64,000 nt of DNA from Macrostomum lignano (GCA_002269645.1 NIVC01000421.1:372001-436000); one strand, 5' to 3'. Shown: positions 29,387-64,000, numbered from the stretch's first letter. The notes: generated from the letters alone by a model not told the origin. Numbers and translations are program-made.

Positions 29387-29479
29387 TTCTACTGGCTCTG
29401 GACGGACTATTAGCATAAGTTGCACGCCGTCATCTGTTTCTGGCCTTCGATTGCACTTGCTGGCTGTTTTAGTCAATTC

Positions 29480-30521: not shown

Positions 30522-30556
<35 letters not shown>

Positions 30557-30680
30557 GAGTGTCTGTCTGTCTGAGTGTCTGTCTGTCTGTCTGTCTATCT
30601 GTCTGTCTGTCTGTCTGTCTGTCTTTCTGTCTGTCTGAGTGTCTGTCTGTCTGCCTGTCTGTCTGTCTGTCTGTCTGTCT
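29480..30680. repeat. TAGTGTCTGTCT 12/16-bp array grading into (GTCT)n
   Basis: Between LIPT1 and REXO4. Confidence 0.96.
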
Positions 30681-38914: not shown

Positions 38915-41689
38915 GCTTTTCTATTGTGTATAACTCTTATAAATTGAATTTAGTTTTTGGACTCTGCGTTGAGCTTGCTAAATACCTGGAAAATTTGGGG
39001 CTCGAGTTTTCAAATTTTCGAAAGCCACAGGCTAAAAAATAGAACAGCAGATGAACAAGCGACCATTTTAAATGCAGACCAGAATTTGCAGAGACCTGAG
39101 ACAGCTTCTATCGGGAGCTGCACGCGCAAAAAAAAGTAGAGAGGATAGAGAGGTGAAAGAGAGTTAGAGAAAAACAGAGCAGCATTGCTGTACTTGTGTT
39201 GCAGATGTACATGTGTTCATATTGTGAGCCAAAGTCAAGCCTCAGCTCACCCATCCCAGCTTACAGTGTGTGAGTAATTTGCTCAGTTCACTGAGCTGTG
39301 ATTCCACGCTTATTTTCTCTTCCTGTCTTACCGTATATTGAGACTTGAACTGCGTACTCGGAACGAATTAATACACCGCAGACTTGCTGTTGTGTTGCGG
39401 CGGGACTACAAGATGCTACAGGTTGTTGTTGCACCAATGTTTTGCTTGCAAAAGCGTGTGCAACTTGTGCATGTGTTTGCGTGCAAAAATAGCTATATTC
39501 CAAAGATTAACAGACAAATCAAAAGATCACATGCATGCTAATGATTTTTCTAACTTAATGCATGCACACTCTACACTTTTGCAGCGATGAATGTTGATAT
39601 GGTTTAAGACATGGAAAGAAATGATGATTAAATTTGTCCTTGCTTTATAGCGTGATCTCCTGGTGATTCCTTTGTTACACTAGGATGATTCTCAAGTATT
39701 TCATTCGATCTTCGATAAATCATGCAGTCAGGGAAGTAACTCCTGCATCGTTGGTGCTGTCTCAAAATATGTAGTTACACAGAATAGCCCATTTGAAACT
39801 AATATCATATACAGCACCTCATGCGACAAATGCTACTTTAATAAGTAAAAAGTAGCGAACGTATATCTTATTTACAGGAATAGTAGGATTCCACCAAATA
39901 TGTTCTAGTGCTTGTATCGTTATTTTTCAAACTTAAAGTTTATTAAATAAATGTACGGACAAGTCTACATGGACATTCTACACATGTACATGTATAGCTA
40001 TGGTCGTAGTACTACTCGAGTCTTAATCTACTTTAAGTAGTAGAATGTGCGCGTTTTACCAGACAAATTTGCTTCATTTTTTGTAGTCGTATGTAGATTA
40101 TTTTTTTATTAGAGGCAGGGGGGTTGTGTGCACCCTGGTGCACTTAAAGCGACATAGGCACACAACCGGCGAGAGGCATTACTGCCCATTCCGCCGACTC
40201 CCCTGAGCAGGCATACAAGCGCGCGGATACGTACGCAGGCACACACTCACACAGGAGTGTACAGCGGCCCTAACTTTATATTATCGTTAGGCATGTACAC
40301 TTCACTGCGCCTTGGGGGGTTGGCTCTCAAGGCCGTTAATTGCACGAGCAGAGCCAAGCCGAGATTCCAGTTCAGCCGTCGTAATGTAGACAGATTTGTT
40401 GCTGATTAGTGTCACCAGCAGCTGCGGTACTCTATAAACACAATGAAACTCAATTCGACTGACTGTTGTGGTAATGGCTTGATCGAAGGGTATTTTTAAA
40501 ATAACAGACCAGCTTTTTGAATTTGGCAATAAAAATACATTTAAAAACTTTCTGCATCACAAATTTTCTAGAGTGTATAGCTCAAAATGAGTTAGGGCCT
40601 AACAACTCATACAAAACTACTGCCTTTATTCAGCTTTATTGGCTGTGGGACCATGTCGCCGAAGGCGTTGCGCACGTGTGCAGCCCTCCTGCCCTTATTT
40701 GGCAGGGAAATCGTGTTTTGATGGAGACCGCGCCTTGCCCATAACAATTTGGCTCTCACCCACCCACTCAGTTGATAATTGTTCCATTCAGCCCAACTTC
40801 GAACTCGCGGGATTTCTGTCGGGATGAACCGGGGGCGCAACGCGACTTAAGTGGCCATTTATCTTTTTCAAAGCAGAATTTCATCAAATAGCTGAGAAAT
40901 CTCGCGGGGAAATAAGCTGAGTTCTCATCTAGTCAAAGAAATAAATAAGGAAAAGTCACTGCAGAAGCAGAAACACACGGAATTGACTGTGCTGTTCCGC
41001 AGCAGGTGATGGCTTTTCTGGCCGAGGAAAATCGGCGGTGTCAAGTTGATCAAACGCTTAGAACAGCTGCCTCCTATCGGGCACCAAAAAGCAGAGGCCG
41101 ATTGTCCCGCTTGCAATTTTCCTTTTCGTTTATCATGCAAGTCGTTTCTTTTATTTTTGCCGAGGAAAAAAAATTGCAGCAAAGAAGTTTGCTTTTGGCG
41201 AATCCTTTCAGAGCTTCAAAAGCGTTGGCATCTGGCGATGCATCCGACACCATAATTTCTGAGCAGCTATTCTGAAAAACAAAAAGAAGGCAAAGGAAAA
41301 GCAAACTTAAAAGGAAAAACAGGGAAAATCTCCGTCCGAAAAGCAACTTGTTAAAGGGAAAAAATTCTAAAGATGGTGTGAAAGAACAACATTTTCTCTT
41401 CAAAGCGTCCATGAACCGACTGTGAGCAATCGTCGTATTGGTTGCTGGGGCCTATTGAACAGATGGTGGACTGATTCCCAAAAAGGACGTCAGAAAAAAA
41501 ACTCTGCAGCTTTCGTTTTATAGCGGAAACCTGGCTCTGCAGACAGTTTCTTCCTCAATATTCTTTTCAAAGTCAAGGTCTTCAAAAATAAGTGGGCCAA
41601 TTTTTGCGACTGGACTTGCGAAAATCGAACTTTCTGGTGACAGAGTGAAACAGGGATAGCCGATTTGAAGGAAGTGAAGGAAGGAAGTG

Positions 41690-41950
41690 GAGGTGAAACA
41701 CGAGTCACTTATTTGGAGTGACAGTAGAAGGGTGAAACACGAGTGACTTATTTGGTGTTACAGTAGAAGGGTGAAACACGAGTGACTTATTTGGTGTGAC
41801 AGTGGGAGGTGAAACACGAGTGACTTATTTGGAGTGACAGTAGAGGTGAAACACGAGTGACTTATTTGGTGTGACAGTGGGAGGTGAAACACGAGTGACT
41901 TATTTGGTGTGACAGTGGGAGGTGAAACACGAGTGACTTATTTGGTGTGC
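41690..41950. repeat. 38-bp minisatellite GGTGAAACACGAGTGACTTATTTGGTGTGACAGTGGGA
   Basis: Immediately 5' of the Dlx ATG. Confidence 0.92.
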
Positions 41951-42011
41951 TGGGAAAGTGCGGTACAGACTCACGCTGACAGTGGGAGTGAAGCTGATTT
42001 GGTGCTGAAAA

Positions 42012-45000
42012 ATGATGATTTCTGTATTAGGCGAGACTGCTGACGCAGGGTTGAAAATTCAGAAGCTGATTTCTCTTCTCAAAATGTCAGCCATTCAAGA
42101 ATTTGAGTCATTTTTTGGCTACGGAAACTATACTGGTAATTACCAGTACTACCAACTCCCAGAGATCAGCCAACAGCATCGGCAGCAAACCTACTATTCA
42201 TCTGGGCCGTCGTTTGCTAACTATCCGACTTACCAAGACCCGGAGAGTTTTCGACAGCAGCAGCAGCAGCCTCCGACGGTTCAGCAAGTTGGTGTTGATA
42301 AATGCTGTTACACCTTTGGTCCTACTGCTGCCGGAGATAAACAGGCTCGGAGCGTTGACGGTAAGAGACTGATTAATTTTGAGAGCTGTATTGTACATTC
42401 TATTTTTATATGAGTAGTATATTTGGAAGTAGAGTATAGAGTAGAGAAGTGTCTAAATGGCGTACCATGAGTTTGCCTGTGTGAGGTGACTGTATGGAGT
42501 TCCATGAGGTGACTGTATGGAGTTCCATGAGGTGACTGTATGGAGTTCCATGAGGTGACTGTATGGAGTTCCATGAGGTGACTGTATGGAGTTCCATGAG
42601 GTGACTGTATGGAGTTCCATGAGGTGACTGTATGGAGTTCCATGAGGTGACTGTATGGAGTTCCATGAGGTGACTGTATGGAGTTCCATGAGGTGACTGT
42701 ATGGAGTTCCATGAGGTGACTGTATGGAGTTCCATGAGGTGACTGTATGGAGTTCCATGAGGTGACTGTATGGAGTTCCATGAGGTGACTGTATGGAGTT
42801 CCATGAGGTGACTGTATGGAGTTCCATGAGGTGACTGTATGGAGTTCCATGAGGTGACTGTATGGAGTTCCATGAGGTGACTGTATGGAGTTCCATGAGG
42901 TGACTGTATGGAGTTCCATGAGGTGACTGTATGGAGTTCCATGAGGTGACTGTATGGAGTTCCATGAGGTGACTGTATGGAGTTCCATGAGGTGACTGTA
43001 TGGAGTTCCATGAGGTGACTGTATGGAGTTCCATGAGGTGACTGTATGGAGTTCCATGAGGTGACTGTATGGAGTTCCATGAGGTGACTGTGCATGCATG
43101 GAGTTCCATGAATGTATGGAGTTCCATGAGGTGACTGTATGCATGTTCCACTGATATGTCTGGGTTTTGACTGTGCATTCACCATAAAAGACACATGCAG
43201 CCAGTTGTATAGTCTAGCCTGCAGCAGTTCCACTGATATGTCTGGGTTTTCGTATGGTATTCACTATAAAGACACTGCAGCATTTTACAGAATATTAGCA
43301 TTCCAGTGTTCTCGGGTTGCAATATAACGGTTGCAAGACCAGTGAAAGTGACGAACTTTTGCAGCTGGAAACCATCCTTAATCAATGCCATTATAAGGGT
43401 TGCTCAGAGAGAATACAAAAGGTTAGCCAAATTCAAAAAGCTAAACTCTCCGTTCGAGCACTGCCATTGCAGACTCCGAGGCGGCGCGCACTACCGTTGG
43501 CGGGAAACACAAAACCGACATCGACTCGGGCGTCGGCGGCTACGTCAACAACCAGGGCCACCAGCAGAAAGCCAGGCAGCCGCGCACCATCTACACCCAG
43601 CTGCAGTTGCAGCAGTTGAATCGGCGCTACCAGCGCACTCAATACCTATCTCTACCGGAAAGGGCTGAACTAGCAACTAGTTTGGGTCTGACTCAGACGC
43701 AAGTAAGATTTATATCAATGGTACCTAGCCAATGGATTGCTATTCTTACTAATCTTTCTGCAGCTGTACTTATATAGCAGTTCAAGATGTTATTACGTGT
43801 AGCATTGCAAATGGATTGCAAGTATTTTAGGTTTAGGATCCGAAGTTCGACGAAACAGGTAGAGATGTAGATTTAGATTGTGAACATTTTTTCTATGATT
43901 TTTTACCAAAATACCTCGAGTGTTTTGGCTGTTGATATGCTAATTTTTTATCTACTGTACAGATAAACAATGATATTGTTAAGTTAAAAACACCTAGATA
44001 TAATAAGTTGAAAAAATTAGCTTTGAAAAGTTTTGAAACATTTTAGGACTATGCACTGTTCTGATGCCTCTCTCAAGCCCACATTTTGCAGGCTGATTGC
44101 TGCTGTTGTGAACTGAACTAAAAATTAATAATCCACACTAATGAGTTTACATTTTAAACTGGTAACTATTTTAACAATTCAATGTTTCTGATTTGTACAA
44201 TAGTCCCATCTGCACCCGTCTCACTCACCAAATTTAACTCAATAAGCTTGCTGTTTCATTACAAACTGGCATTTACCGTACAATAAGAGTTTATCCGTGT
44301 CACGTCTGCTTTGCTACCATGTATATTGAGGTAGCTCTGGGCTTCCTAGCTCCGTGCACACCTCTGCGGGCAAAGCAAACCAGGTTGACTTCAGTTTAAC
44401 CTCATGATGCAGACATGGCACGATTCCCTCTTCACTGTCGATTTTCTGCGATTCTGTGAGAATTAACATACCTACCTACCTCAGTTACCTCACTTTACAC
44501 CAGATGACCTTCAAAGATTTTGCTATACAGTATGGCTTCATTCCCCCCCTCTCATAAAGTTCCTTGCATTAACTGCAGTGTGCTCAATGTGAATTCCAAT
44601 TCTTAACACACCAGCACCAAAATGTGATAATCGTTTTCCTCTACATTCAACAACCACCCGTCCAGAAACTTTTATACGCTGCTTATTCATTTATATTTTG
44701 TTCACTCAGCACTTGGCCTGTGTTTTGGGGCTTGCCTTTGTCATGGTTCTATACAGCTGATTAGTGCCTTATAGCTTTTTTGGCAGTTATGAGACTTTAT
44801 GACTCCCAATTGAAAAATCGTTTCAAGACTGCTCAAAACTTCATCAAACCTCATCTCTATACGGATATTGTCTGTGCAGGAGAGGAGAGAAAATAAAATG
44901 GGTTTGGGGTAAACAAAGAAGGGTTGGGTTTAAGGGCCTCGCTAGAAAATCGATGGCTCTCCTTTACCCTAACCCTAAAAGCCTCAACACGCACAAACGG

Positions 45001-47876: not shown

Positions 47877-50800
47877 TCAAATCGGTACATCAATGCAGGC
47901 GATGGCGAGTTCGCCGCACAGCGGACAGTCATCCTCCGGCCTGGGCAGCGGACCCACCTGTCCAGCCGAGAGCACAGCAGCTTTGGCGCAGTCCAGATGC
48001 AGGCAGTGGCCGCACGGATAGGCCAGAAAAGTGCCAGTCAGCAGCGGACCGCCGTAGCTGCACGAGCTGGCACTGCAGACTTGACTGGCGCTCACAGTCT
48101 GGCAGGCCATCTTGTTGCTCGCCATACGCGATCGCACGGCCGTGGCGTACTCGGTGCACTTATCCATCCGCTGCCTCAGCGCGTCCATCCGCTCTTTATA
48201 CTGATCCAACGATCTACAGATTGCATCCTTGAAGCTGTCTATGGTGGCAAAGTCAGGAAAAAATGGCAGCACATCTTCGATGCTCAATAAATCCGGACAA
48301 TCGTCCAGGAACTCCATCGCTCTGGGCACGTCTTTCTCTTCTGTGATCACGTGACGCGCCACCATCAGCCAGAGGGCTCGCTTCTCGTCCTGCTCCTGCG
48401 GCAGATTGGCCAAAGACTTCGCCAGGCCGACGTCGAATTCCAGAGCCAAGGCGACACCTTCGCGATAGTGTCCAAGCAGGTGGTGCAGCCGGACGCAGGG
48501 CTTCTTCAGGTTGCTTCGCTGGCACAAATCCAACGCGTATTTGGCATCGAATGGTAGACTAACAGACTGCTGATGCCGGTCAGCAGCTAGCGAGGCCTTC
48601 GCCGAGGCGGTTTCGATGTACGTTACTAAGCGGCCCGGATACGACTCGGCATAAATGTGCAACAGCAGATTGTGCAGAGGCTTGTACTCACTTCTCAGTG
48701 TGTTGACTGCGTACTCCAGGTATCTGGAAGAGCCAGTTAATGAGTCAGTCAGTTGGTGAGTGAGTGAGTCAATGAGTGAGTCAGTGAGTGAGTGAGTGAG
48801 TGAGTGAGTGAGTGAGTGAATGAGTGAGTCAGTGAGTGAGTGAGTGAGTGAGTAGTGAGTGAGTGAGTGAGTGAGTCAGTGAGTGAGTGAGTGAGTGAGT
48901 GAGTGAGTGAGTGAGTGAGTGAGTCAATGAGTGAGTGAGTGAGTGAGTGAGTGAGTCAGTGAGTGAGTGAGTGAGTGAGTGAGTGAGTGAGTGAGTGAGT
49001 CAGTGAGTGAGTGAGTGAGTGAGTGAATGAGTGAGTCAGTGAGTGAGTGAGTGAGTGAGTGAGTGAGTGAGTGAGTGAGTCAATGAGTGAGTGAGTGAGT
49101 GAGTGAGTGAGTGAGTGAGTGAGTGAGTCAATGAGTGAGTGAGTGAGTGAGAGAGTGAGTGAGTGAGTGAGTGAGTGAGTGAGTGAGTGAGTGAGGCAGT
49201 AAGTGAGTGAGTCAGTGAGTCAGTGAGTGAGTGAGTGAATGAGTGAGTCAGTGAGTGAGTGAGTGAGTGAGTGAGTGAGTCAGTGAGAGAGTGAGTGAGT
49301 GAGTGAGTGAGTGAGGCAGTAAGTGAGTGAGTCAGTGAGTCAGTGAGTGAGTCAGTGAGTCAGTGAGACAGTAAACAGGATAAACATAATAAATAAATCA
49401 ATGAGCAACTCACCGAAGCGCCTGATCCCTAGGCGCGGTGAGGAGAGCTGGCAACAGAAGTCTGGGATCCAGCTTATTGCCCAGACTGATCCAGGAGTCC
49501 ACAGTCTTCTCGGGGACCTGGCTCAGGAGCAGTTGGGCGTGTCGAACGTGCAAAACTGGACACCTGCAAGAGCGAGGGGGAGCAGAAGCAAAAATGAAAC
49601 ACGAAATGAAATTGACACACCTACTGACACAAACTGAAACCCTGACACACATACTGAAACTGACACAACTATTGAACTGAAAGAAATGAAGCTGACCAAA
49701 CTACTGACACACCTACTGACACAAACTGTAACTCTGACACATCTGACATATAATGAATATCTGACACACCTACTGACACCTACTGAATATCTGACACACC
49801 TACTGACACAAACTGTAGCTCTGACACACCTACTGACACAAACTGAATATCTGACACGCCTAGTGTCAAACTGAATGACAACCTACTGACAATCTGACAC
49901 TCGAAACGACACTAGAAAGCTAAAACTTACTAACATGAGAAAATACCCATAACACTCTGCCTGACACAAGAACTGACACAAAAGAGAATTACACACACCT
50001 GGGATGCCTATCAATAGTCTTAAGCGCCTCAGTATAATCCTCATTCTCCAAATAGAACAGCACAATGGAATCCTGATCGTTTAGCAAGCAGGCCAGGTAC
50101 ACCAAGTTCTCCGAATCCGCGTGACTCTGCATCAGCTGATAGATCACGTGACGCAGCCGTTCCAACAGCGGCCTCAACTGCGGCTTAGCCAGAAATCGGC
50201 GAAACTCTTCGCTCTCCAACGCGTAGTCCTGACTGCCCTGACGGCCGCTGTCTCGCCAGGCGCCCAGCTTCTTCAGGTAGAGTTCTGTCAGCCAGATGAG
50301 CAGCACGGCATCCCCGCCGCCGGCACCCGACGCCGAACTCAGGTCGGCATTTAGTCGGCATTTGAGCAGAATTTTCAATCCGTCTACGTCGCCATTCGGA
50401 GCGGAGAGGAACTTCAGCGCCGTGTGCTCGAACGGCCGGTCGCTTTTGCTGAACAGATTGGCGCTGTCAACGAATTTGCCGTTGGCGAAAAATTTCTCGG
50501 CTAGCAGGGCGTACACCTGGGAGCGCTCCGCCTGGCTGGGGCAGCACTGCAGGGCCTGTTCGTGCTGGCCCAGCTGCAGGTAGATGCGCCACGCTAGGCT
50601 GCGCTCGTCACCGATGTCCACCTGGGGTTGTTGGAGATAGATAGATGGATAGATAGATGGATAGATGGATAGATAGATGGATAGATGGATAGATAGATGG
50701 ATAGATAGATGGATAGATGGATAGATAGATAGATGGATAGATAGATAGATAGATAGATGGATAGATAGATGGATAGATAGATAGATAGATAGATAGGTAG

Positions 50801-50975
50801 ATATAGATAGATAGATGGATAGACAGACAGACAGATAGATAGATAGATAGATAGATAAAAGGATAGATAGATAGATAGATGGATAGATAGATGGATGGAT
50901 AGATAGATAGATAGACAGATAGATGGATAGATAGATAGATGGATAGATAGATAGATAGATGGATAGATAGATAGG

Positions 50976-51044
<69 letters not shown>

Positions 51045-51130
51045 GGATAGATAGATAGGTAGATAGGTAGATATATATATATAGATAGATAGATGGATAG
51101 ACAGACAGACAGATAGATAGATAGATAGAT

Positions 51131-51164
<34 letters not shown>

Positions 51165-53822
51165 ATAGATAGATATATAGATAGACAGACAGACAGACAG
51201 ACAGAAGACAGACCGACAGACAGACAGAAGACAGACAGAAGACAGACAGACAGACAGACAGGCAGCCACAATCAGCAATCGCAATCACCTTATACACGCC
51301 AACTTCGGTGAAGGCCCATAGCAGCCTGGCAGAGGAGTCGAAGGCCATGCCCCGGTAGGTCAGCTGGCACCTGTCCTGGGCGTCAACCCTGGACACAGCC
51401 AGCCCATTGAGCAGGCTGTGCACTGCCAGCCGGTCGGTGTACAGAAGCACCACGTGATAATTAAGCGACTCGGCCGTGATTGGAACCTGCGCAGTGAAGA
51501 GAATCATAGAAAAGTGCATGTACTTTTTACGAGATTTAACGCGAGCTATTATAGCGAAGAAACTTGAGTATTATTTTACTTAGGCGGATAGACCGGACTA
51601 AGGAGCGGAGTTAGGGGCGGAAATATTAAGGTTGAGGGGCGGAAGGAGAATTGAGGAACGGATAGAGCGGATTGAAGGGCGGATTGAAGGGCTGATGGGG
51701 CGGATTGAAGGGCGGATGGAGCGGATTGAAGGGCGGATGGGGCGGATTGAAGGGCGGATGGGGCGGATTGAAGGGCGGATGGAGCGGATTGAAGGGCGGA
51801 TGGAGCATGTTGAAGGGCGGATGGGGCGGATTGAAGGGCGGATGGGGCGGATTGAAGGGCGGATGGAGCGGATTGAAGGGCGGATGGGGCGGATTGAAGG
51901 GCGGATGGAGCGGATTGAAGGGCGGATGGAGCGGATTGAAGGGCGGATGGGGCGGATTGAAGGGCGGATGGGGTGGATTGAAGGGAGGATGGAAGATGAA
52001 GCAGATCGAAAAAGAGCGGATTAGAGCACAAAGCGGATAAAGCAAGCAAGCCAGCCTACCTGCTTATTCTCATAGGGCAACAGGATGCATTTGTCAGTGC
52101 AAAAGTTCGGCAGGCCGTGGTCAAGAAAGCCGCAGTAGCAGCCCAGGCCGGACAGCCAGGCCACAGTATAATCCGCCCCTTTAGGCGACGTGCGCAACAA
52201 TTTCAAACAGCTTCGGCCCAAATCTGGCGGATGACTTTTGAAGGGCGGCCCGCCGGCTTCGCTTAAAGCTTTAGCAAAGAGAGGAGCATAGTGAGCAGAT
52301 GAGCCGTCAGCTGTGATAGCCAGCTTGCCTTTGAATTCGTACAGGTGCACAGGAGTGCTGGCCAATAGGAAGTAGCGACGCTTTTTGTTTCGACTGGAGT
52401 CGGCCACGTCGGCTGATTGAATGACGCCCAGTTGAAGGCCGGTGACGGACTTGCCCAGGCTGAACAGCTGGTGACAGTATTGGTCGGCCTGCGGATGTTG
52501 GCAATGCGGAGAATATAGGTTCAAGTAGTGCGGTATGCTCAGGTTAGTGTCTGAGCACTCCCACTAGTATGGGTACTCCAATGGGATCTGAGCACTTTCT
52601 AAACAACCTCAATAGTGCCTAAGCAACCTGAATAGTATCTGAGCACTGTACTCTCAATAGTATCTGAGCACTCTCAATAGTATCTGAGCACTCTCAATAG
52701 TATCTGAGCACCCTCAATAGTATCTGAGCAGCCTCAATAGTATCTGAGCACTCTCAATAGTATCTAAGCACTCTCAATGGTATCTGAGCACTCTCAATAG
52801 TATCTGAGCACTCTCAATAGTATCTGAGCACCCTTGATAGTATCTGAGCACTCACAATAGTATCTGAGCACCCTCAATAGTACATGTATCTGAGCACCCT
52901 TGATAGTATCTGAGCACTCACAATAGTATCTGAGCACCCTCAATAGTACATGTATCTGAGCACTCACAATAGTATCTGAGCACCCTCAATAGTACATGTA
53001 TCTGAGCACTCACAATAGTATCTCAGCATTCTAAATAATATCTGAGCACTTCCACTGGTATCCAAGAGCACATTTTAATTCAGAGCACAATAATGTGAAT
53101 GTTCCGAGTATTATTTTCCGAGTATATCAGCATAAGCACCTCATTAGCATTAGTACTAAAGCACCCTAAATTTACGAGCAAGCAATTATTACACTAATTT
53201 ACATAACCAGACAGACTTTTTTATCATCTCCACCAAGCAGCCCCATAGCGTGTCGCATTCCGCCGCCTCCGCTGCCGCCGCCGGTGCCGCCAGCATCAGC
53301 GAACAGGGCCAACTCGTAGATGTGACCATCGGCCGTGCCAACCAGAATCGGTCCAGTCCCACTGGCACCTTTGCCGCTATAAGCGATTCCATCCTCGCCC
53401 GAAGGGCACCAAGCCACGCTATCCACTAGTTGATTCTTCAGTTTAGCGATGGGTTTAATTGCTATGCCAGCATCTTGATTATGCCTGTTGTTAGACCAGC
53501 AGGCATATAGAACGCAGCCGGACTGCATGCTAGCAATGATGTGGGTACCAGTGGGATCGAAGAACAGACTGTGTAGCCGATCGTCTGAGCCGCCACTCTT
53601 GGCTAAATCTAAGCGTTGCAAAGCTTTGTTATCAGATCGGCGAGTGTCAATGCAGTGCAAATAGTTGCTAGGGAAAGCCATTAGTAACCGACCGGAAGCG
53701 GCTAGCAGGTGAGTAATGGGCAGCGGCGGTTGGAACGCTTCGATTCGTTGAATTCGAAGCAATTGACCCGCTGCTACTTCCAGCTGTTGCTGGTGCTGCT
53801 GTTCCTGCTGCTGGTAGTCCAT
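47877..53822 (-). CDS. VPS18: Vacuolar protein sorting 18 (HOPS/CORVET subunit)
   Basis: Exons 53822-53217, 52488-52060, 51486-51289, 50621-49999, 49563-49414 and 48723-47877 join in frame. Motifs [63 protein letters not shown] and a C-terminal RING (CGHCLHLDC...CPLCGE). Confidence 0.95.
48740..49370. repeat. (GTGA)n microsatellite
   Basis: VPS18 intron 5. Confidence 0.97.
49610..49890. repeat. Degenerate CTGACACACCTACTGACACAAACTG array
   Basis: VPS18 intron 4. Confidence 0.85.
50635..51262. repeat. (GATA/GATG/GACA)n microsatellite
   Basis: Fills nearly all of VPS18 intron 3. Confidence 0.97.
51640..52010. repeat. 21-bp minisatellite GAAGGGCGGATGGRGCGGATT
   Basis: VPS18 intron 2. Confidence 0.95.
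52600..53040. repeat. 20-bp minisatellite AGTATCTGAGCACTCTCAAT
   Basis: VPS18 intron 1. Confidence 0.94.
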
Positions 53823-53864
53823 GGCTGGCTGGGAATGGCAATTTTTGTAGGTTCATTTTTATCT

Positions 53865-54160: not shown

Positions 54161-57100
54161 AATTCCACTGATTTTGTGCAGATGAAGATTCTTAACGATT
54201 CCTAGTGGATCTCCAGAGTTACAATATGACGCATATAAGCTACACCAAAATACAAATTAATAAGACACACGGTAGACAAATATCATAAATGGAACGATTG
54301 CTGTTAACTTTGTAATTATATTTAATTAAGAAAAATGCTTACAGAACATATTGTAGCAACAATTGAATTAAAGCATCCCGTGCGCTTTCACTAGAGTCGC
54401 CTAGCTACCAATATTGTGACGAGCAAAGTGTCCCCTACGATACAAGAAGAAATACAGCTAAAATTAGAACAAAAAAGAGAAAAAACTCCCGACAGAAGAT
54501 GGGGGAGGGCTGGGAAGTGACATCAAAGTGCCGATTTTCACCGGCAATTATCTTCCACAAGCTAAAAGAAAAGAAACTTGTTGAAAGACCGCTTCGCATC
54601 GAAGCAAATGCTGCCCCCATCGGACTAAGCATGAGAACAACCAAACTTCCTCCAATTATTAAGTTCCCTAACGTGGACTGACGCAAAACTGGCTTCTACT
54701 ATTTGGGGGCAAACAGGATAGCAGTTTCGATAGAATAACGGCAGATTTGGTGGGGAAAGAGGATGGCAGTTTCGATAGAATAACGGCAGATTTGGTGGGG
54801 AAAGAGGATGGCAGTTTTGGTAGAGAAACGGCAGATTTGGTGGGGAAAGAGGATGGCAGTTTCGATAGAATAACGGCAGATTTGGTGGGGAAAGAGGATG
54901 GCAGTTTCGATAGAATAACGGCAGATTTGGTGGGGAAAGAGGATGGCAGTTTCGATAGAATAACGGCAGATTTGGTGGGGAAAGAGGATGGCAGTTTTGG
55001 TAGAGAAACGGCAGATTTGGTGGGGAAAGAGGATGGCAGTTTCGGTAGAATAACGGCAGATTTGGGGGGAAAGAGGATGGCAGTTTCGGTAGAAGAACGG
55101 CAGATTTGGTGGGGAAAGAGGATGGCAGTTTCGGTAGAATAACGGCAGATTTGGGGGGGAAAGAGGATGGCAGTTTTGGTAGAGAAACGGCAGATTTGGT
55201 GGGGAAAGAGGATGGCAGTTTCGGTAGAATAACGGCAGATTTGGTGGGGAAAGAGGATGGCAGTTTCGATAGAATAACGGCAGATTTGGTGGGGAAAGAG
55301 GATGGCAGTTTCGATAGAATAACGGCAGATTTGGTGGGGAAAGAGGATGGCAGTTTTGGTAGAGAAACGGCAGATTTGGGGGGAAAGAGGATGGCAGTTT
55401 CGGTCGAATAACGGCAGATTTGGGGGGGAAGAGGATGGCAGTTTCGGTAGAATAACGGCAGATTTGGGGGGGGGAAAGAGGATTGCAGTTTCGGTAGAGG
55501 AACAGCAGATTTGGGGGGAAAGAGGATGGCAGTTTCGGTAGAAGAACGGCAGATTTGGTGGGGAAAGAGGATGGCAGTTTCGGTAGAATAACGGCAGATT
55601 TGGGGGGAAGAGGATGGCAGTTTCGGTAGAGGAACAGCAGATTTGGGGGAGAAGAGGATGGCAGTTTCGGTAGAAGAACGGCAGATTTGGTGGGGAAAGA
55701 GGATGGCAGTTTCGGTAGAATAACGGCAGATTTGGGGGGAAGAGGATGGCAGTTTCGGTAGAGGAACAGCAGATTTGGGGGAGAAGAGGATGGCAGTTTC
55801 GGTAGAAGAACGGCAGCTTTTGATGGGGAAAGATGATGGCAGTTTCGGTAGAAGAACGGCAGATTTTGATGGGGAAAGATGATGGCAGTTTTGGTAGAGG
55901 AACGGCAGATTTTGATGGGGAAAGATGATGGCAGTTTCGGTAGAAGAACGGCAGATTTTGATGGGGAAAGATGATGGCAGTTTCGGTAGAAGAACGGCAG
56001 ATTTTGATGGGGAAAGATGATGGCAGTTTTGGTAAAAGAACGGCGGATTTTGATGGGGAAAGATGATGGCAGTTTCAGTAGAAGAACGGCAGATTTTGAT
56101 GGGGAAAGATGATGGCAGTTTCGGTAGAATAACGGCAGATTTTGATGGGGAAAGATGATGGCAGTTTTGGTAGAGGAACGGCAGATTTGGGGGAGAAGAG
56201 GATGGCAGTTTCGGTAGAAGAACGGCAGATTTGGGGGGAAGAGGATGGCAGTTTCGGTAGAATAACGGCAGATTTGGGGGGAAGAGGATGGCAGTTTCGG
56301 TAGAAGAACGGCAGATTTGGTGGGGAAAGAGGATGGCAGTTTCGGTAGAATAACGGCAGATTTGGGGGGAAGAGGATGGCAGTTTCGGTAGAGGAACAGC
56401 AGATTTGGGGGAGAAGAGGATGGCAGTTTCGGTAGAAGAACGGCAGATTTGGTGGGGAAAGAGGATGGCAGTTTCGGTAGAATAACGGCAGATTTGGGGG
56501 GAAGAGGATGGCAGTTTCGGTAGAGGAACAGCAGATTTGGGGGGAGAAGAGGATGGCAGTTTCGGTAGAGGAACGGCAGATTTGGTGGGAAAGAGGATGG
56601 CAGTTTCGGTAGAAGCGCAGATTTGGGGGGAGAAGAGGATGGCAGTTTCGGTAGAGGAACGGCAGATTTGGTGGGAAAGAGGATGGCAGTTTCGGTAGAA
56701 GCGCAGATTTGGGGGGGGAGAAGAGGATGGCAATTTCGGTAGAAGCGCAGATTTGGGGGGAGAAGAGGATGGCAGTTTCGGTAGAAGCGCAGATTTGGGG
56801 GGGAGAAGAGGATGGCAGTTTCGGTAGAGGAACGGCAGATTTGGTGGGAAAGAGGATGGCAGTTTCGGTAGAAGCGCAGATTTGGGGGGGGAGAAGAGGA
56901 TGGCAATTTCGGTAGAAGCGCAGATTTGGGGGGGAGAAGAGGATGGCAATTTCGGTAGAAGGGCAGATTTGGGGGGAAAGAGGATGGCAGTTTCGGTAGA
57001 AGAACGGCAGATTTGGGGGAAGAGGATGGCAGGTTCGAAAGAACGGCAAATTTGAGAAGATGGCAGTTTTGGAAGGCCGGTTAAGGAGGTTCGATATGAT

Positions 57101-60100
57101 ATTTCTACCCAATCTTATTATCTAAAGATCTCCAGGTGAGAGTCTTGATTCTCTACAGATCTCCAGGTGAGAGTCTTGATTATCTACAGATCTCCAGGTG
57201 AGAGTCTTGATTATCTAAAGATCTCCAGGTGAGAATTCCACTGATTTTGTGCAGATGAAGATTCTTAACGATTCCTAGTGGATCTCCAGAGTTACAATAT
57301 GACGCATATAAGCTACACCAAAATACAAATTAATAAGACACACGGTAGACAAATATCATAAATGGAACGATTGCTGTTAACTTTGTAATTATATTTAATT
57401 AAGAAAAATGCTTACAGAACATATTGTAGCAACAATTGAATTAAAGCATCCCGTGCGCTTTCACTAGAGTCGCCTAGCTACCAATATTGTGACGAGCAAA
57501 GTGTCCCCTACGATACAAGAAGAAATACAGCTAAAATTAGAACAAAAAAGAGAAAAAACTCCCGACAGAAGATGGGGGAGGGCTGGGAAGTGACATCAAA
57601 GTGCCGATTTTCACCGGCAATTATCTTCCACAAGCTAAAAGAAAAGAAACTTGTTGAAAGACCGCTTCGCATCGAAGCAAATGCTGCCCCCATCGGACTA
57701 AGCATGAGAACAACCAAACTTCCTCCAATTATTAAGTTCCCTAACGTGGACTGACGCAAAACTGGCTTCTACTATTTGGGGGCAAACAGGATAGCAGTTT
57801 CGATAGAATAACGGCAGATTTGGTGGGGAAAGAGGATGGCAGTTTCGATAGAATAACGGCAGATTTGGTGGGGAAAGAGGATGGCAGTTTTGGTAGAGAA
57901 ACGGCAGATTTGGTGGGGAAAGAGGATGGCAGTTTCGATAGAATAACGGCAGATTTGGTGGGGAAAGAGGATGGCAGTTTCGATAGAATAACGGCAGATT
58001 TGGTGGGGAAAGAGGATGGCAGTTTCGATAGAATAACGGCAGATTTGGTGGGGAAAGAGGATGGCAGTTTTGGTAGAGAAACGGCAGATTTGGTGGGGAA
58101 AGAGGATGGCAGTTTCGGTAGAATAACGGCAGATTTGGGGGGGGAAAGAGGATGGCAGTTTCGGTAGAAGAACGGCAGATTTGGTGGGGAAAGAGGATGG
58201 CAGTTTCGGTAGAATAACGGCAGATTTGGGGGGGAAAGAGGATGGCAGTTTTGGTAGAGAAACGGCAGATTTGGTGGGGAAAGAGGATGGCAGTTTCGGT
58301 AGAATAACGGCAGATTTGGTGGGGAAAGAGGATGGCAGTTTCGATAGAATAACGGCAGATTTGGTGGGGAAAGAGGATGGCAGTTTCGATAGAATAACGG
58401 CAGATTTGGTGGGGAAAGAGGATGGCAGTTTTGGTAGAGAAACGGCAGATTTGGGGGGGAAAGAGGATGGCAGTTTCGGTCGAATAACGGCAGATTTGGG
58501 GGGGAAAGAGGATGGCAGTTTCGGTAGAATAACGGCAGATTTGGGGGGGGGGAAAGAGGATAGCAGTTTCGGTAGAGGAACAGCAGATTTGGGGGGAGAA
58601 GAGGATGGCAGTTTCGGTAGAAGAACGGCAGATTTGGTGGGGAAAGAGGATGGCAGTTTCGGTAGAATAACGGCAGATTTGGGGGGAAGAGGATGGCAGT
58701 TTCGGTAGAGGAACAGCAGATTTGGGGGGAGAAGAGGATGGCAGTTTCGGTAGAAGAACGGCAGATTTGGTGGGGAAAGAGGATGGCAGTTTCGGTAGAA
58801 TAACGGCAGATTTGGGGGGAAGAGGATGGCAGTTTCGGTAGAGGAACAGCAGATTTGGGGGGAGAAGAGGATGGCAGTTTCGGTAGAAGAACGGCAGCTT
58901 TTGATGGGGAAAGATGATGGCAGTTTCGGTAGAAGAACGGCAGATTTTGATGGGGAAAGATGATGGCAGTTTTGGTAGAGGAACGGCAGATTTTGATGGG
59001 GAAAGATGATGGCAGTTTCGGTAGAAGAACGGCAGATTTTGATGGGGAAAGATGATGGCAGTTTCGGTAGAAGAACGGCAGATTTTGATGGGGAAAGATG
59101 ATGGCAGTTTTGGTAAAAGAACGGCGGATTTTGATGGGGAAAGATGATGGCAGTTTCAGTAGAAGAACGGCAGATTTTGATGGGGAAAGATGATGGCAGT
59201 TTCGGTAGAATAACGGCAGATTTTGATGGGGAAAGATGATGGCAGTTTTGGTAGAGGAACGGCAGATTTGGGGGGAGAAGAGGATGGCAGTTTCGGTAGA
59301 AGAACGGCAGATTTGGGGGGAAGAGGATGGCAGTTTCGGTAGAATAACGGCAGATTTGGGGGGAAGAGGATGGCAGTTTCGGTAGAAGAACGGCAGATTT
59401 GGTGGGGAAAGAGGATGGCAGTTTCGGTAGAATAACGGCAGATTTGGGGGGAAGAGGATGGCAGTTTCGGTAGAGGAACAGCAGATTTGGGGGAGAAGAG
59501 GATGGCAGTTTCGGTAGAAGAACGGCAGATTTGGTGGGGAAAGAGGATGGCAGTTTCGGTAGAATAACGGCAGATTTGGGGGGAAGAGGATGGCAGTTTC
59601 GGTAGAGGAACAGCAGATTTGGGGGGAGAAGAGGATGGCAGTTTCGGTAGAGGAACGGCAGATTTGGTGGGAAAGAGGATGGCAGTTTCGGTAGAAGCGC
59701 AGATTTGGGGGGGGAGAAGAGGATGGCAGTTTCGGTAGAGGAACGGCAGATTTGGTGGGAAAGAGGATGGCAGTTTCGGTAGAAGCGCAGATTTGGGGGG
59801 GGAGAAGAGGATGGCAATTTCGGTAGAAGCGCAGATTTGGGGGGGAGAAGAGGATGGCAGTTTCGGTAGAAGCGCAGATTTGGGGGGGGAGAAGAGGATG
59901 GCAGTTTCGGTAGAGGAACGGCAGATTTGGTGGGAAAGAGGATGGCAGTTTCGGTAGAAGCGCAGATTTGGGGGGGGAGAAGAGGATGGCAATTTCGGTA
60001 GAAGCGCAGATTTGGGGGGAGAAGAGGATGGCAATTTCGGTAGAAGGGCAGATTTGGGGGGAAAGAGGATGGCAGTTTCGGTAGAAGAACGGCAGATTTG

Positions 60101-60205
60101 GGGGAAGAGGATGGCAGGTTCGAAAGAACGGCAAATTTGAGAAGATGGCAGTTTTGGAAGGCCGGTTAAGGAGGTTCGATATGATATTTCTACCCAATCT
60201 TATTA
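54048..60205. repeat. Tandem duplication of ~3.07 kb (54048-57120 and 57121-60205)
   Basis: Unique segments 54170-54720 and 57240-57790 look identical. Satellite variants occur in the same order in both copies. ATTA microhomology at the junction. Confidence 0.92.
54715..57060. repeat. 45-bp satellite GGCAGATTTGGTGGGGAAAGAGGATGGCAGTTTCGGTAGAATAAC (second copy 57790-60140)
   Basis: Dimer of ~22-bp GGCAG subunits; source of the 700-800 aa spurious ORFs. Confidence 0.97.
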
Positions 60206-60245: not shown

Positions 60246-61757
60246 TTAAAGCACCCTAGCAACCAGTTTAGCAACCGAATCGTGCAACATCATAGCCTTG
60301 CGCACTCCAGTCTCAATCATCTCCGTCATGGACTCGAACTGTAGCGAGCCTTCGCCGCAAGTCTGGCAGGCCACCAGCCGACCATTCGAATCAACTCCCA
60401 CAGTTACTCTGGCCATCGAGCAGGACTCCTCGAGTTGATTAGCGTCCACAATCTGTTGCGAGCCGATCCGGTGCACGGTGGCAAACAGAGGCAGCGCCTG
60501 GGCAGACAACAGGCTGGCTGGCAAAGCGCGCATCAACGCGGCTGACGCGGCGATACTGGCTGCGTCTAGTAAATCGCCGTCGTAGCCTAGCAACAGGATG
60601 TCAACAAACACTGGAGTCGGGGTGCGCAGGCAGCGGTAGAGGCTGGATAGGTGAGCTTGGGCCTCATCAGCGAGCTGCTGCTGCTCTGGGCCGGAGCCGA
60701 GGCAGCTGCAGTCCACCCACACTGATACTGGATGGCTGACCGGCTGCTGCTGCTGAGCTGCTGCAACTGAGGAAAGGGTTGGGGCGGAAATCAGGTATGG
60801 ATTATGATGAGGGGCGGATATCATGTATGGATGATTATGAGGGGGCGGAAATCAGGCATGGATTATGATGAAGGGCGGATATCATGTATGGATGATTATG
60901 AGGGGGCAGAAATCAGGCATGGATTATGATGAAGGGCGGATATCATGTATGGATGATTATGAGGGGGCGGAAATCAGGTATGGATTATGATGAGGGGCGG
61001 ATATCATGTATGGATGATTATGAGGGGGCGGAAATCAGGTATGGATTATGATGAGGGGCGGATATCATGTATGGATGATTATGAGGGGGGCGGAAATCAG
61101 GTATGGAAGATGGTGAGGGGGCGGAAATCGGGTATGGATTATGGTGAGGGGGCGGAAATCGGGTATGGATGATGGTGAGGGGGCGGAAATCGGGTATGGA
61201 TGATGGTGAGGGGGCGGAAATCGGGTATGGATGATAGTGAGGGGGCGGAAATCGGGTATGGATTATGGTGAGGGGCGGAAATCTGGTATGGATAATAATG
61301 AGGGGGTGGAAATCAGGTATGGATAATAATGAGGGGGTGGAAATCTGGTATGGATAATAATGAGGGGGTGGAAATCTGGTATGGATAATAATGAGGGGGC
61401 GGAAATCAGGTATGGATAATAATGAGGGGGCGGAAATCTGGTATGTGGTTTATGGAAATGAGGAAATGAGGTACAAACGATCAGAGACAGTCATACAACA
61501 CATAGCAGTCATACCAACAGAGCCAGTAGATCCCTGTTGCTGGGCAGTCGCACCGGGATTATCTTCCTCTCGCACAGACACGAGCACGTCTGTCTCCCTA
61601 GGCTGACCTGGGCTGAGGCGGTGGCGTAACATAGCAGGTCGAGTCTGAGCGCGGCCTGCCGATAGGCCAGGCATTGCCGGCCATCGATTCGAACAGCGTC
61701 TTGAACGCTATCGAATATGTACTGCCGCTCCGGCTCGCTTAGCAACTGGGCGGGTAG
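60246..61757 (-). CDS. EXOSC7: Exosome complex component RRP42; no genomic ATG in the first identified exon and an apparent 1-nt frameshift
   Basis: Exons 61757-61515 and 60766-60246. LSEPERQYIFDSVQDAVRIDGR and ASAQVSLG/ETDVLVSV (frame shifts at the CCC at 61596-98), then VWVDCS, VDILLLGYDGDLLDAASIA and QIVDANQLEE. Confidence 0.85.
60780..61440. repeat. ~30-bp minisatellite GGGGCGGAAATCAGGTATGGATTATGATGA, partly as an alternating ~62-bp higher-order unit
   Basis: EXOSC7 intron; runs up to the acceptor's pyrimidine tract. Confidence 0.93.
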
Positions 61758-61789
61758 CTGTGGGATTTAGCAGTAATTACTGTGATTTA

Positions 61790-62122
61790 GTGAAGATTGG
61801 TAGATTCGGTGAAGATTGGCAGATTCGGTGAAGATTGGCAGATTCGGTGAAGATTGGCACATTCAGTGAAGATTGGCAGATTCGGTGAGGTGAAGATTGG
61901 CAGATTCGGTGACGATTGGCAGATTCGGTGAAGATTGGCAGATTCGGTGAAGATTGGCAGATTCGGTGAAGATTGGCAGATTCGGTGAAGATTGGCAGAT
62001 TCGGTGAAGATTGGCAGATTCGGTGACGATTGGCAGATTCGGTGAAGATTGGCAGATTCAGTGACGATTGGCAGATTCAGTGAAGATTGGCAGATTCGGT
62101 GAAGATTGGCAGATTCGGTGAG
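61790..62122. repeat. 19-bp minisatellite GAAGATTGGCAGATTCGGT
   Basis: Upstream of the EXOSC7 acceptor (putative outron or intron). Confidence 0.96.
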
Positions 62123-62693
62123 GCTAACCAAATCTACGGCCAAGATAATTTCTTTCTACAAAAAATAAGGCTTAAAAATATCATCAATTAAAAAAATAAG
62201 CATTAATTTTATTTATTGAAGTTTCATAAAAACTGAAATTAACATTAAGAACGCTTGGTTACAGTCAATTTCAACATTTTATAAGCAAATAATGCACTAA
62301 AATGCAAGTAAAGAAATTAGTAAGTTTCGAACTCGACTACAATTAAAGACATACAAGACGTAGACGTACTTGATTAAAATGTTTGTTATGTTTCTAGGAT
62401 AAATTGTTAAAGTTAATAAAAAACAATTACAATAAAGTATAAGATTGGACATAAATCAACCAGATAGTAGATACCATAGATACGAGAATGACTATGCAAC
62501 TAAAATAGTTAAAAAGTAGAGCGTCTACTCTTTTTCTTAATAGTTTGTCTGCGCAGTGTCATTTAAATTAATGTGGCAGCTAAAATGACCTTTCCTTCCT
62601 AGGTTTTGCAGCCTCAGGAGCATATGGGGTTAAGACTAATGTAGCTTTTTGCAGCCCATTTGGGCTTACACACATTGGATTCAATCCAATATA

Positions 62694-64000
62694 CGTTTGC
62701 CAATGTAACGGAGCTTTTGTCTATGGTAGCAAGGCTGCCACAGCGGCATTTAACTTGGTCCAACAAGCATCAATTTGGTCCAAACGCTCGCTCGTGAGCC
62801 ATTCGGCAAACTCTTGCTTTTGGCAACTGCCTGCAGGTTGTTGCGTACCGCTGGAATGTCAGCGTCTCCACCAACAATTTTCTGTCGCCTTTCCACAGCT
62901 CTCTGTAAACCATCTTTTCTTTGAACCATATGCTGGGCTGTCGAACCATTGGCTTGTGATTGAAGCACTGAACAGAGGTGAATACCCAAAGGACATTGCA
63001 AGGCTGCTGAATGTAAAAGAAAATATGGTTTACAGCATCCATCAGCGCGTTGAAACCACTGGCGGCAGAGGTCGCCTGCGAAAGGGTGGCAATCGCCAAG
63101 GCAAGTTGCGAGAGCCTCAGGTCCAACTGCTACTCGATGCAGTTGAGAAACCCTTTGTTAACGGTGCAAAAATGCAGCAGAAGCTGAAGGAACAGTTCCA
63201 GTTGGTTATCAGATTTCGACTATTGGCAGTGCTATGGAAAAGCGACTGGAAACTGCTGGTAGAGACGCTGAAATTCCAGCCGTTGCGAAAGGCAGTTGCG
63301 AAAAGGCAAGAGTCTGCCGAATGGCTCACGAGCGTTTGGACCAAATTGATGCTTGTTGGACCAAATTGATACTTGTTGGACCAAATTGATGCTTGTTGGA
63401 CCAAATTGATACTTGTTGGACCAAATTGATACTTGTTGGACCAAATTGATGCTTGTTGGACCAAATTGATACTTGTTGGACCAAATTGATGCTTGTTGGA
63501 CCAAATTGATACTTGTTGGACCAAATTGATACTTGTTGGACCAAATTGATGCTTGTTGGACCAAATTGATGCTTGTTGGACCAAATTGATACTTGTTGGA
63601 CCAAATTGATGCTTGTTGGACCAAATTGATGCTTGTTGGACCAAATTGATACTTGTTGGACCAAATTGATGCTTGTTGGACCAAATTGATTTGTTGGACC
63701 AAATTGATGCTTGTTGGACCAAATTGATGCTTGTTGGACCAAATTGATACTTGTTGGACCAAATTGATGCTTGTTGGACCAAATTGATGCTTGTTGGACC
63801 AAATTGATACTTGTTGGACCAAATTGATGCTTGTTGGACCAAATTGATACTTGTTGGACCAAATTGATGCTTGTTGGACCAAATTGATGCTTGTTGGACC
63901 AAATTGATGCTTGTTGGACCAAATTGATACTTGTTGGACCAAATCAAATGCCACTGTGCCAGCCTTGCTACCATAGACAAAAGCTCCATTGCATTGGCAA
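62694..64000 (+). mobile_element. Internally deleted Tc1/IS630-like element with ~200-bp TIRs; the right end runs off the window
   Basis: 62697-62900 is the imperfect reverse complement of 63225-63340 plus 63940-64000. Internal HTH-like ORF IEALNRGEYPKDIARLLNVKENMVYSI...GGNRQGKL. TA at 62692-93. Confidence 0.8.
63335..63945. repeat. 20-bp minisatellite GGACCAAATTGATRCTTGTT inside the right TIR
   Basis: About 30 copies; the left TIR has a single unit. Confidence 0.97.

What the first reader, a model, noticed from the sequence alone, without database searches (positions are those of the whole stretch)
61740..61790. EXOSC7 has no genomic start codon: the initiator Met is probably supplied by a trans-spliced leader ending in AUG
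Seen in sequence: the - strand reads ...CTAAATCCCACAG|CTA CCC GCC CAG TTG CTA AGC GAG, a splice acceptor directly followed in phase 0 by LPAQLLSEPE, with no ATG. Established knowledge: RRP42 orthologs start only a few residues before LSE (human MASVTLSEAE), and flatworm spliced leaders end in a conserved AUG that can initiate translation. Inference: an SL ATG fused at 61757 gives M-LPAQLLSEPE, the expected length. The sequence upstream is only a 19-bp array, AT-rich DNA and transposon ends, which looks like an outron.
Basis: partly seen in the sequence, partly recalled or inferred. Interest (0 to 1): 0.72.

Follow-up and report, generated by a model that had tools for sequence, protein, structure and literature searches.

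The report
Flatworm exosome gene borrows its start codon

Summary
On the minus strand an acceptor (cccacAG, AG at 61759-61758) is followed directly by CTA CCC GCC CAG TTG CTA AGC GAG. An in-frame TAA lies 12 nt upstream. The reading frame has no ATG before about residue 160 of the protein.

The window is Macrostomum lignano and the gene is RRP42/EXOSC7. The published M. lignano spliced leader is 35 nt and ends in ATG, followed by a GTAAG donor.

Two other genomic copies have the same acceptor, the same upstream stop and no ATG. They differ mostly at synonymous sites. GenBank annotates both as 5'-partial, and on one of them the CDS starts at the first base after the AG.

Using the leader's AUG as initiator is an established flatworm mechanism (Cheng et al. 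2006). Macrostomum genome papers already call this ATG a start codon. It is an ordinary example of a known kind.

- The window copy has GGG (61598-61596) where both other copies have GGGG. This breaks the frame and explains GenBank's wrong-frame protein (MPGLSAGR...).
- A second in-phase acceptor 12 nt downstream (CAG|TTG) would give M-LLSEPE.

The parts
61758..61760 (-). Proposed spliced-leader trans-splice acceptor CAG (AG at 61759-61758). The exon starts at 61757.
   Evidence: Identical in L001 and L002. The L002 partial CDS starts at the first base after this AG. It matches the published M. lignano trans-acceptor motif [T/C]TNCAG only partly (CCACAG).
61767..61769 (-). In-frame TAA, 12 nt upstream of the exon start. 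It closes the frame on the 5' side.
   Evidence: Conserved in L001 and L002.
61515..61757 (-). RRP42/EXOSC7 exon 1: 243 nt here, 244 nt in the other copies. It has no ATG in frame. Donor GTTG|gtatga, phase 1.
   Evidence: PDB alignment to human RRP42 from LSE onward.
61746..61748 (-). Second possible acceptor CAG, also in phase 0. The exon would start at TTG 61745 and give M-LLSEPE.
   Evidence: Sequence. Conserved in L001 and L002. The N-terminal length also fits orthologs.
61596..61598 (-). GGG run with one G missing relative to both other copies (GGGG). This frameshifts the window copy.
   Evidence: Homology to RRP42 continues in the other frame.
61672..61674 (-). Out-of-frame ATG that GenBank used as the start of the window copy (PAA83381.1, MPGLSAGRAQTRP...). 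This is an artefact of the frameshift.
   Evidence: The CDS extent 61674-60246 is 1429 nt.
60767..61514 (-). Intron 1, mostly a 31/61-bp tandem array (60781-61445).
60246..60766 (-). Exon 2, running to the stop TAA (60248-60246). It holds the rest of RNase_PH and the RNase_PH_C domain.
61790..62121 (.). 19-bp tandem array (17.2 copies) directly upstream of the acceptor. This is presumed outron. It is more than 2 kb long in L002.
62122..62696 (.). Window 62590-62140 is 94% identical to L002, which is about the neutral level.
62697..64000 (.). Transposon remnant: 87-nt terminal inverted repeats, an internal HTH-domain ORF on the plus strand, and a 20-bp array at 63336-63944.

Best explanation
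The M. lignano RRP42/EXOSC7 pre-mRNA is trans-spliced. The 35-nt spliced leader, which ends in AUG, is joined to the acceptor at 61759-61758 and the upstream repeat-rich outron is discarded. The mature mRNA then reads ...UUGCAUG|CUACCCGCCCAGUUGCUAAGCGAG. The leader's AUG is the only AUG ahead of the conserved N-terminus and initiates M-LPAQLLSEPERQYIF...

Shown here:
- The sequence anatomy.
- The gene identity and the organism.
- Conservation of the architecture in three genomic copies.
- 5'-partial RNA-based gene models that start at or near the acceptor.

Taken from the literature: the leader sequence, how common trans-splicing is in this species, and the ability of the flatworm leader AUG to initiate translation.

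Inferred: that this acceptor receives the leader in vivo, and that translation starts at the leader's AUG.

Separately, the window's copy has a 1-nt deletion in a G run. This is either a residual assembly error or a real inactivating change in one of several redundant copies.
For: (1): acceptor, phase 0, in-frame TAA 12 nt upstream, no in-frame ATG.
(2): RRP42 homology begins at the exon start.
(3): 134 of 138 family representatives start with M, and about 129 of the 138 start within -6 to +5 residues of the hypothetical start.
(4): the organism is M. lignano; its leader ends in ATG followed by a GTAAG donor, 30% of genes are trans-spliced, and 69.9% of trans-spliced genes are conserved with human.
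(5): two more copies have the identical acceptor and stop. L001 and L002 differ by 19 substitutions, about 14 of them synonymous, plus one in-frame 6-nt indel, so the ATG-less architecture persists under purifying selection.
(6): GenBank marks both intact copies 'partial'. On L002 the CDS begins at the first base after the AG, as expected from a pipeline that trims the leader and cuts transcripts at leader-read peaks.
(7): use of the leader AUG as initiator is established in S. mansoni, S. japonicum and E. granulosus; the Macrostomum genome paper labels the leader's final ATG a translation start codon.
Against: - No leader-containing read, RACE product or peptide was available, so use of this acceptor is inferred.
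- The acceptor CCACAG fits the published [T/C]TNCAG motif only in part.
- On L001 the partial CDS starts 9 nt downstream of the acceptor rather than at it. This is unexplained.
- A cis-spliced upstream micro-exon cannot be excluded from sequence alone. There are 141 in-phase ATG...|GT candidates in the 5.3 kb upstream, and one of them (ATGTGT|GTAAGC at 62675) has a consensus donor and is kept in L002.
- The context of the leader AUG (U at -3, C at +4) is weak by vertebrate Kozak rules. This last point is my own reading of the leader sequence.
Confidence: 0.8

Rival explanations
1. The mechanism is the same but the junction differs. The leader is spliced to the second in-phase acceptor 12 nt downstream (gcccAG|TTG, exon start 61745), giving M-LLSEPERQ... 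Both sites may also be used, NAGNAG-like.
For: - The CAG at 61748-61746 is in phase 0 and is preceded by a pyrimidine-rich CTACCCGCC.
- It is conserved in L001 and L002.
- The resulting N-terminus (Met 2 residues before LSE) is nearer the mode of orthologs, which tend to be 1-5 residues shorter than M-LPAQLLSE.
- The only substitution in the first 12 nt between copies (P/L) would then be non-coding.
Against: - The L002 GenBank CDS starts at the upstream site, at the first base after cacAG.
- GCCCAG fits the [T/C]TNCAG motif no better than the upstream site does.
Confidence: 0.12
2. A small cis-spliced 5' exon ending in (or containing) an ATG lies upstream and is joined to the same acceptor. 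Candidates are the reader's ATG|GTATCT at 62477 and ATGTGT|GTAAGC at 62675. No trans-splicing would then be needed.
For: Both candidate sites exist and are retained in L002. The GTAAGC donor matches the GT[G/A]AG consensus.
Against: - Chance alone gives 141 in-phase ATG...|GT candidates in 5.3 kb, 11 of them with GTRAG donors.
- The spacer is conserved only at about the neutral level: 94%, against roughly 92-93% expected from synonymous divergence.
- The RNA-seq-guided annotation found no such exon in either intact copy and left the CDS 5'-partial.
- GTATCT is a poor donor.
Confidence: 0.06
3. The missing start codon only reflects decay, because the window copy is a pseudogene. The frameshift is real and nothing functional is made from this locus.
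For: - The 1-nt deletion at 61598-61596 breaks the frame.
- An earlier-assembly gene model (A0A1I8IIF5...CYATALSPGQPRETDVLV) also needs the GGG version.
- The upstream RING/WD40 gene model on the same contig is 395 aa, against 752-754 aa on the other contigs.
- M. lignano DV1 carries duplicated chromosome copies, so redundancy exists.
Against: - The ATG-less architecture is shared by the two intact copies, which are under purifying selection. It is therefore the normal gene structure and not decay.
- Apart from the indel, the window CDS differs from L001 by a single synonymous base.
- The change is a homopolymer length change in a PacBio-based assembly of near-identical copies, which is the typical form of a consensus error.
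- The two assemblies share PacBio reads, so they are not independent.
Confidence: 0.35
4. Translation starts at a non-AUG codon inside exon 1 (for example TTG 61745-61743) on an mRNA that is not trans-spliced.
For: The TTG codon lies just before LSE. Near-cognate initiation is documented in other taxa that use spliced leaders.
Against: - There is no evidence for a promoter or a transcript 5' end that would place this TTG first.
- The species has an AUG-ending leader and a canonical acceptor lies right here.
- Unspliced upstream sequence contains many AUGs that would intercept scanning ribosomes.
Confidence: 0.02

Closest known systems
Flatworm mRNAs that use the spliced leader's 3'-terminal AUG as initiator Met (Cheng, Cohen, Ndegwa and Davis 2006, J Biol Chem 281:733, as cited in PMC9851317, PMC12582326, PMC5832876 and PMC3510090)
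   Same: The leader ends in AUG. It is in frame with the ORF. There is no usable genomic AUG before the conserved N-terminus, and the N-terminus matches orthologs only if the leader's AUG is used.
   Different: Those cases come from parasitic flatworms (Schistosoma, Echinococcus) and rest on cDNA and translation evidence. Here the species is the free-living M. lignano, the gene is RRP42/EXOSC7, and the evidence is genomic plus annotation only.
M. lignano SL trans-spliced genes as annotated by TBONE in Mlig_RNA_3_7 (Wudarski et al. 2017, PMC5730564; Ustyantsev and Berezikov 2021, PMC8629364)
   Same: A conserved housekeeping gene in a same-strand gene row with repeat-filled intergenic DNA, whose gene model begins at an AG acceptor.
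   Different: I could not see the trans-splicing flag or the leader-read track for Mlig032125.g4, Mlig020040.g1 or Mlig026854.g2. The acceptor matches the top motif only partly.
slORFs: ORFs created by start codons donated by spliced leaders in nematodes, Oikopleura and trypanosomes (slORFfinder, PMC9851317)
   Same: The start codon is supplied in trans by the leader.
   Different: Those are mostly near-cognate codons and often create new or alternative ORFs. Here a canonical AUG completes the main conserved ORF.
Human EXOSC7 / yeast Rrp42 (PDB 6d6q_E, 6h25_E, 2nn6_E)
   Same: RNase_PH plus RNase_PH_C architecture. The N-terminal LSExE..YI motif lies a few residues from the start.
   Different: About 30-35% identity. 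The M. lignano protein has a Q/A-rich insert at the exon junction, is shorter (about 255 aa against 291), and its gene has no start codon of its own.

Membership tests
mRNAs initiated at the flatworm spliced-leader AUG | The organism's SL RNA exon ends in AUG immediately before its splice donor | tested here: met
   Organism identified as M. lignano. The published leader ...TTGCATG is followed by a GTAAG donor (PMC8629364). No SL RNA gene lies in the window.
mRNAs initiated at the flatworm spliced-leader AUG | The leader AUG is in frame with the main ORF, with no stop codon between them | tested here: met
   The acceptor is in phase 0. ATG|CTA CCC GCC CAG TTG CTA AGC... stays open through exon 1 in the intact copies.
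mRNAs initiated at the flatworm spliced-leader AUG | No genomic in-frame AUG can give the conserved N-terminus | tested here: met
   In-frame TAA 12 nt upstream. The first in-frame Met is at about residue 160. Orthologs start 0-6 residues before LSE.
mRNAs initiated at the flatworm spliced-leader AUG | The leader is actually joined to this acceptor in vivo (leader-bearing reads or cDNAs) | not testable with these tools
   Only indirect evidence: 5'-partial CDS models start at the acceptor on L002 and 9 nt inside it on L001. No transcript-derived protein starting with M was found. Paper supplements held none of these gene ids.
mRNAs initiated at the flatworm spliced-leader AUG | Translation starts at the leader AUG (Ribo-seq, N-terminal peptide, reporter) | not testable with these tools
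   No such data are accessible.
RRP42/EXOSC7 (RNase PH-like exosome ring subunit) | RNase_PH followed by the RNase_PH_C domain | tested here: met
   PF01138 at 6.7e-10 and PF03725 at 6.4e-11, both above the gathering score.
RRP42/EXOSC7 (RNase PH-like exosome ring subunit) | Closest to RRP42 rather than to the paralogous ring subunits RRP41, RRP43, RRP45, RRP46 or MTR3 | tested here: met
   Human RRP42 at 7.8e-28, against RRP45 at 8.7e-08 or weaker and RRP43 at 1.8e-05. UniRef names the M. lignano proteins RRP42.
Pseudogene (window copy only) | An ORF-disrupting lesion that is real rather than an assembly error | tested here: inconclusive
   The 1-nt deletion in the G run is present. An earlier-assembly model also needs it, but the two assemblies share reads. 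There is no access to raw reads.

The most novel reading that the evidence does not exclude
An essential core-exosome subunit of M. lignano depends entirely on SL trans-splicing for its initiator codon in every genomic copy. One recently duplicated copy (this window) has also begun to decay through a real frameshift. This would give a dated, gene-level example both of obligate translational dependence on trans-splicing in a free-living, transgenesis-ready flatworm, and of early pseudogenisation after the DV1 chromosome duplication.
Probability: 0.3. Interest if true: 0.35.

Novelty: new member of a known kind. Interest (0 to 1): 0.22.

Why it matters
- Annotation: genes of this kind are systematically mis-annotated in M. 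lignano. They appear as 'partial' proteins without Met, or, as in this window, as a wrong-frame protein that starts at a spurious ATG (PAA83381.1). Adding the leader's ATG back before ORF calling would fix a whole class of gene models.
- Biology: the case extends the leader-AUG initiator mechanism, documented mainly in parasitic flatworms, to a named housekeeping gene in an early-branching free-living flatworm where transgenic reporter tests are possible.
- It does not open a new question.

Tried and rejected
- A second word-indexed homology search with the hypothetical M-LPAQ... protein returned only the same five M. lignano entries. Low-complexity Q/A words swamped the candidate list. No protein starting at the leader Met exists in that collection.
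- Supplement searches for Mlig032125, Mlig020040, Mlig026854 and EXOSC7 in PMC8629364 and PMC5816591, and for RRP42, EXOSC7 and 'exosome complex' in PMC12582326, found nothing.
- Cheng et al. 2006 itself is not held. It is cited through four papers that describe it.
- The leader sequence is absent from the window with up to 3 mismatches, and Rfam finds no RNA family in the window.
- A look-up of the genomic locus of the cestode ortholog P0014 found nothing on record.
- I first thought the homopolymer difference at L003:4577 explained the truncated upstream RING/WD40 model. It lies in an intron repeat, so I dropped that explanation.
- I did not scan the metagenome, prokaryote-genome or viral collections for the leader-exon junction, because they cannot contain flatworm transcripts.

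Full report
**What is in the sequence**

On the minus strand the text is ...cttcactaaatcacagtaattactgctaaatcccacag|CTACCCGCCCAGTTGCTAAGCGAGCCGGAGCGGCAG..., with the first exon base at 61757. This translates to LPAQLLSEPERQYIFDSVQDAVRIDGRQCLAYRQ.... The codons just upstream in the same frame are TAA ATC CCA CAG. The frame therefore opens only 9 nt before the AG and contains no ATG.

- A 19-bp tandem array at 61790-62121, 17.2 copies.
- An AT-rich spacer.
- A transposon remnant with 87-nt terminal inverted repeats at 62697-62783 and 63914-64000, holding an HTH-domain ORF.

**Gene and organism**

A conceptual protein built from the two exons matches human RRP42/EXOSC7 in the PDB at E = 7.8e-28. 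The alignment begins at LSEPE against LSEAE. The protein carries RNase_PH and RNase_PH_C domains.

The protein database returns 100%-identical Macrostomum lignano entries from assembly GCA_002269645.1. The window lies on contig NIVC01000421.1.

The gene model is:
- Exon 1: 61757-61515, donor GTTG|gtatga.
- Intron 1: 748 nt, filled with a 31/61-bp array.
- Exon 2: 60766-60246, ending in TAA.

RRP42 homology runs ...ASAQVSLG in one frame and ETDVLVSVREE... in another. The cause is a run of three G at 61598-61596. Both other genomic copies have four G there.

Apart from this deletion, the window's coding sequence differs from the copy on NIVC01003717 (L001) by one synonymous base. Because of the shift, GenBank's protein for the window copy (PAA83381.1, Mlig032125g4) starts at an out-of-frame ATG at 61674 and reads MPGLSAGRAQTRPAMLRHRLSPGQPR before rejoining the true frame.

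I cannot decide whether the deletion is real.
- For an assembly error: it is a homopolymer length change in a PacBio-based assembly of near-identical copies.
- For a real change: an older-assembly gene model (A0A1I8IIF5) also requires the GGG version. However, the two assemblies share reads, so this is not independent evidence.

**Is the missing ATG real and normal for this gene?**

Yes. Two more copies were fetched: L001, and the more diverged L002 on NIVC01000215. Both have the same cccacag acceptor, the same in-frame TAA and no ATG.

L001 and L002 differ by 19 substitutions, about 14 of them synonymous, plus one in-frame 6-nt indel. The gene is therefore under purifying selection with this architecture. 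In the intact copies the first in-frame Met is near residue 160, after the N-terminal domain.

GenBank labels both intact copies 'partial', and neither has an initiator Met. On L002 the partial CDS begins at the first base after the AG. On L001 it begins 9 nt further in, which I cannot explain.

**Does the organism have the required leader?**

Yes. The single M. lignano spliced leader is CGGTCTCTTACTGCGAAGACTCAATTTATTGCATG, and the SL RNA gene has a GTAAG donor right after the ATG (PMC8629364). Further points from the literature:
- 30-39% of genes are trans-spliced, and genes conserved with human are strongly enriched among them.
- The annotation pipeline trimmed the leader from reads and transcripts, cut transcriptional units at leader-read peaks, and then called ORFs with TransDecoder (PMC5730564).
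- That procedure produces exactly what is seen here: a transcript that begins at an acceptor, with a 5'-partial ORF.

**Is the resulting protein sensible?**

An exhaustive HMMER scan gave 456 relatives. Of the 138 whose alignment reaches the N-terminus, 134 start with M. About 129 of the 138 start within -6 to +5 residues of the hypothetical Met of M-LPAQLLSEPE, and most are 1-5 residues shorter. The homology therefore starts at the exon boundary, and a Met donated at the junction gives a normal N-terminus.

One identified flatworm relative, from the cestode Anoplocephala perfoliata, is annotated with its own Met (MDSVLISDAERFY). The ATG-less state is therefore not universal in the phylum.

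**Alternatives**

- A second AG lies 12 nt downstream (gcccAG|TTG, exon start 61745). It is also in phase 0 and would give M-LLSEPE. The two junctions cannot be told apart without reads. The L002 gene model favours the upstream one.
- A cis-spliced micro-exon cannot be excluded from sequence. There are 141 in-phase ATG...|GT candidates in the 5.3 kb upstream. ATGTGT|GTAAGC at 62675 has a better donor and is retained in L002.
- Against that alternative, the spacer is conserved only at about the neutral level (94%), and the RNA-guided annotation found no such exon.
- Non-AUG initiation has nothing in its favour.

**Comparison with what is known**

Use of the flatworm leader's 3'-terminal AUG as initiator Met was shown by Cheng et al. 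in 2006. [quoted passage not shown] In E. granulosus 143 of 187 leader-bearing clusters are full length only if the leader ATG is used, and this use is conserved among orthologs (PMC3510090). All reported flatworm leaders keep the terminal ATG (PMC12582326).

The finding meets the sequence-level criteria of this class. The two functional criteria could not be tested here: leader-bearing reads at this site, and initiation at the leader's AUG.

**Verdict**

The case is an ordinary new example of a known mechanism, so the interest is low.

Its practical value is for annotation:
- 'Partial' Met-less M. lignano proteins of this type are probably complete once the leader's ATG is restored.
- The window's GenBank protein is a frameshift artefact.

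Noticed in passing
window 61596-61598 (-): The G run is one base shorter than in both other genomic copies. This frameshifts exon 1 of the window's RRP42 copy. It is either an assembly error or a real inactivating change.
   Followed up: partly
window 61674-60246 (-): GenBank protein PAA83381.1 (Mlig032125g4) for this locus starts at an out-of-frame ATG. Its first 26 residues or so (MPGLSAGRAQTRPAMLRHRLSPGQPR) are not RRP42 sequence.
   Followed up: yes
L001:5992-6001: On contig NIVC01003717 the 5'-partial CDS starts at CAG, 9 nt downstream of the acceptor and not after any AG. On L002 it starts exactly at the acceptor. The reason is unknown.
   Followed up: no
window 54701-60139: A 45-bp tandem array of about 122 copies fills most of the 6.4 kb between the RRP42 stop and the next same-strand gene. 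It contains a higher-order duplication of about 3.07 kb (identical ORFs at 54435-54686 and 57508-57759).
   Followed up: no
window 53822-53860 (-): The Pep3/Vps18 gene starts at ATG 53822. An acceptor-like ccattcccag lies 6 nt upstream. A leader ATG spliced there would also be in frame (M-P-A-M-D-Y) and would remove an out-of-frame upstream ATG at 53856.
   Followed up: no
window 62697-64000: Non-autonomous transposon remnant with 87-nt terminal inverted repeats (92% complementary), an internal ORF with a winged-HTH (HTH_29) match on the plus strand, and a 30-copy 20-bp array at 63336-63944.
   Followed up: partly
L002:2255-2838: The diverged copy has a 584-bp insertion inside the AT-rich spacer, at the point corresponding to about window 62585. 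Its two ends read as inverted repeats in the printed sequence (not checked with the repeat tool), so it looks like a MITE.
   Followed up: no
L003:2863-4656 (beyond window coordinate 64000): The upstream same-strand RING/WD40 (RFWD3-like) gene model is 395 aa on the window's contig, against 752-754 aa on the other two contigs. WD40-coding sequence continues after its annotated stop. The model ends at a TAG created by a C-to-A difference, read in another frame.
   Followed up: partly
window 35566-37512 (+): A 648-aa ORF with reverse transcriptase and RNase H domains lies in the 66% GC block. It is a retrotransposon fragment.
   Followed up: partly
window 1-6000, 26987-30676, 41689-43150, 48741-53049: The density of short-unit tandem arrays is very high (units of 4 to 158 bp). 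Several sit inside introns of the Vps18 gene.
   Followed up: no
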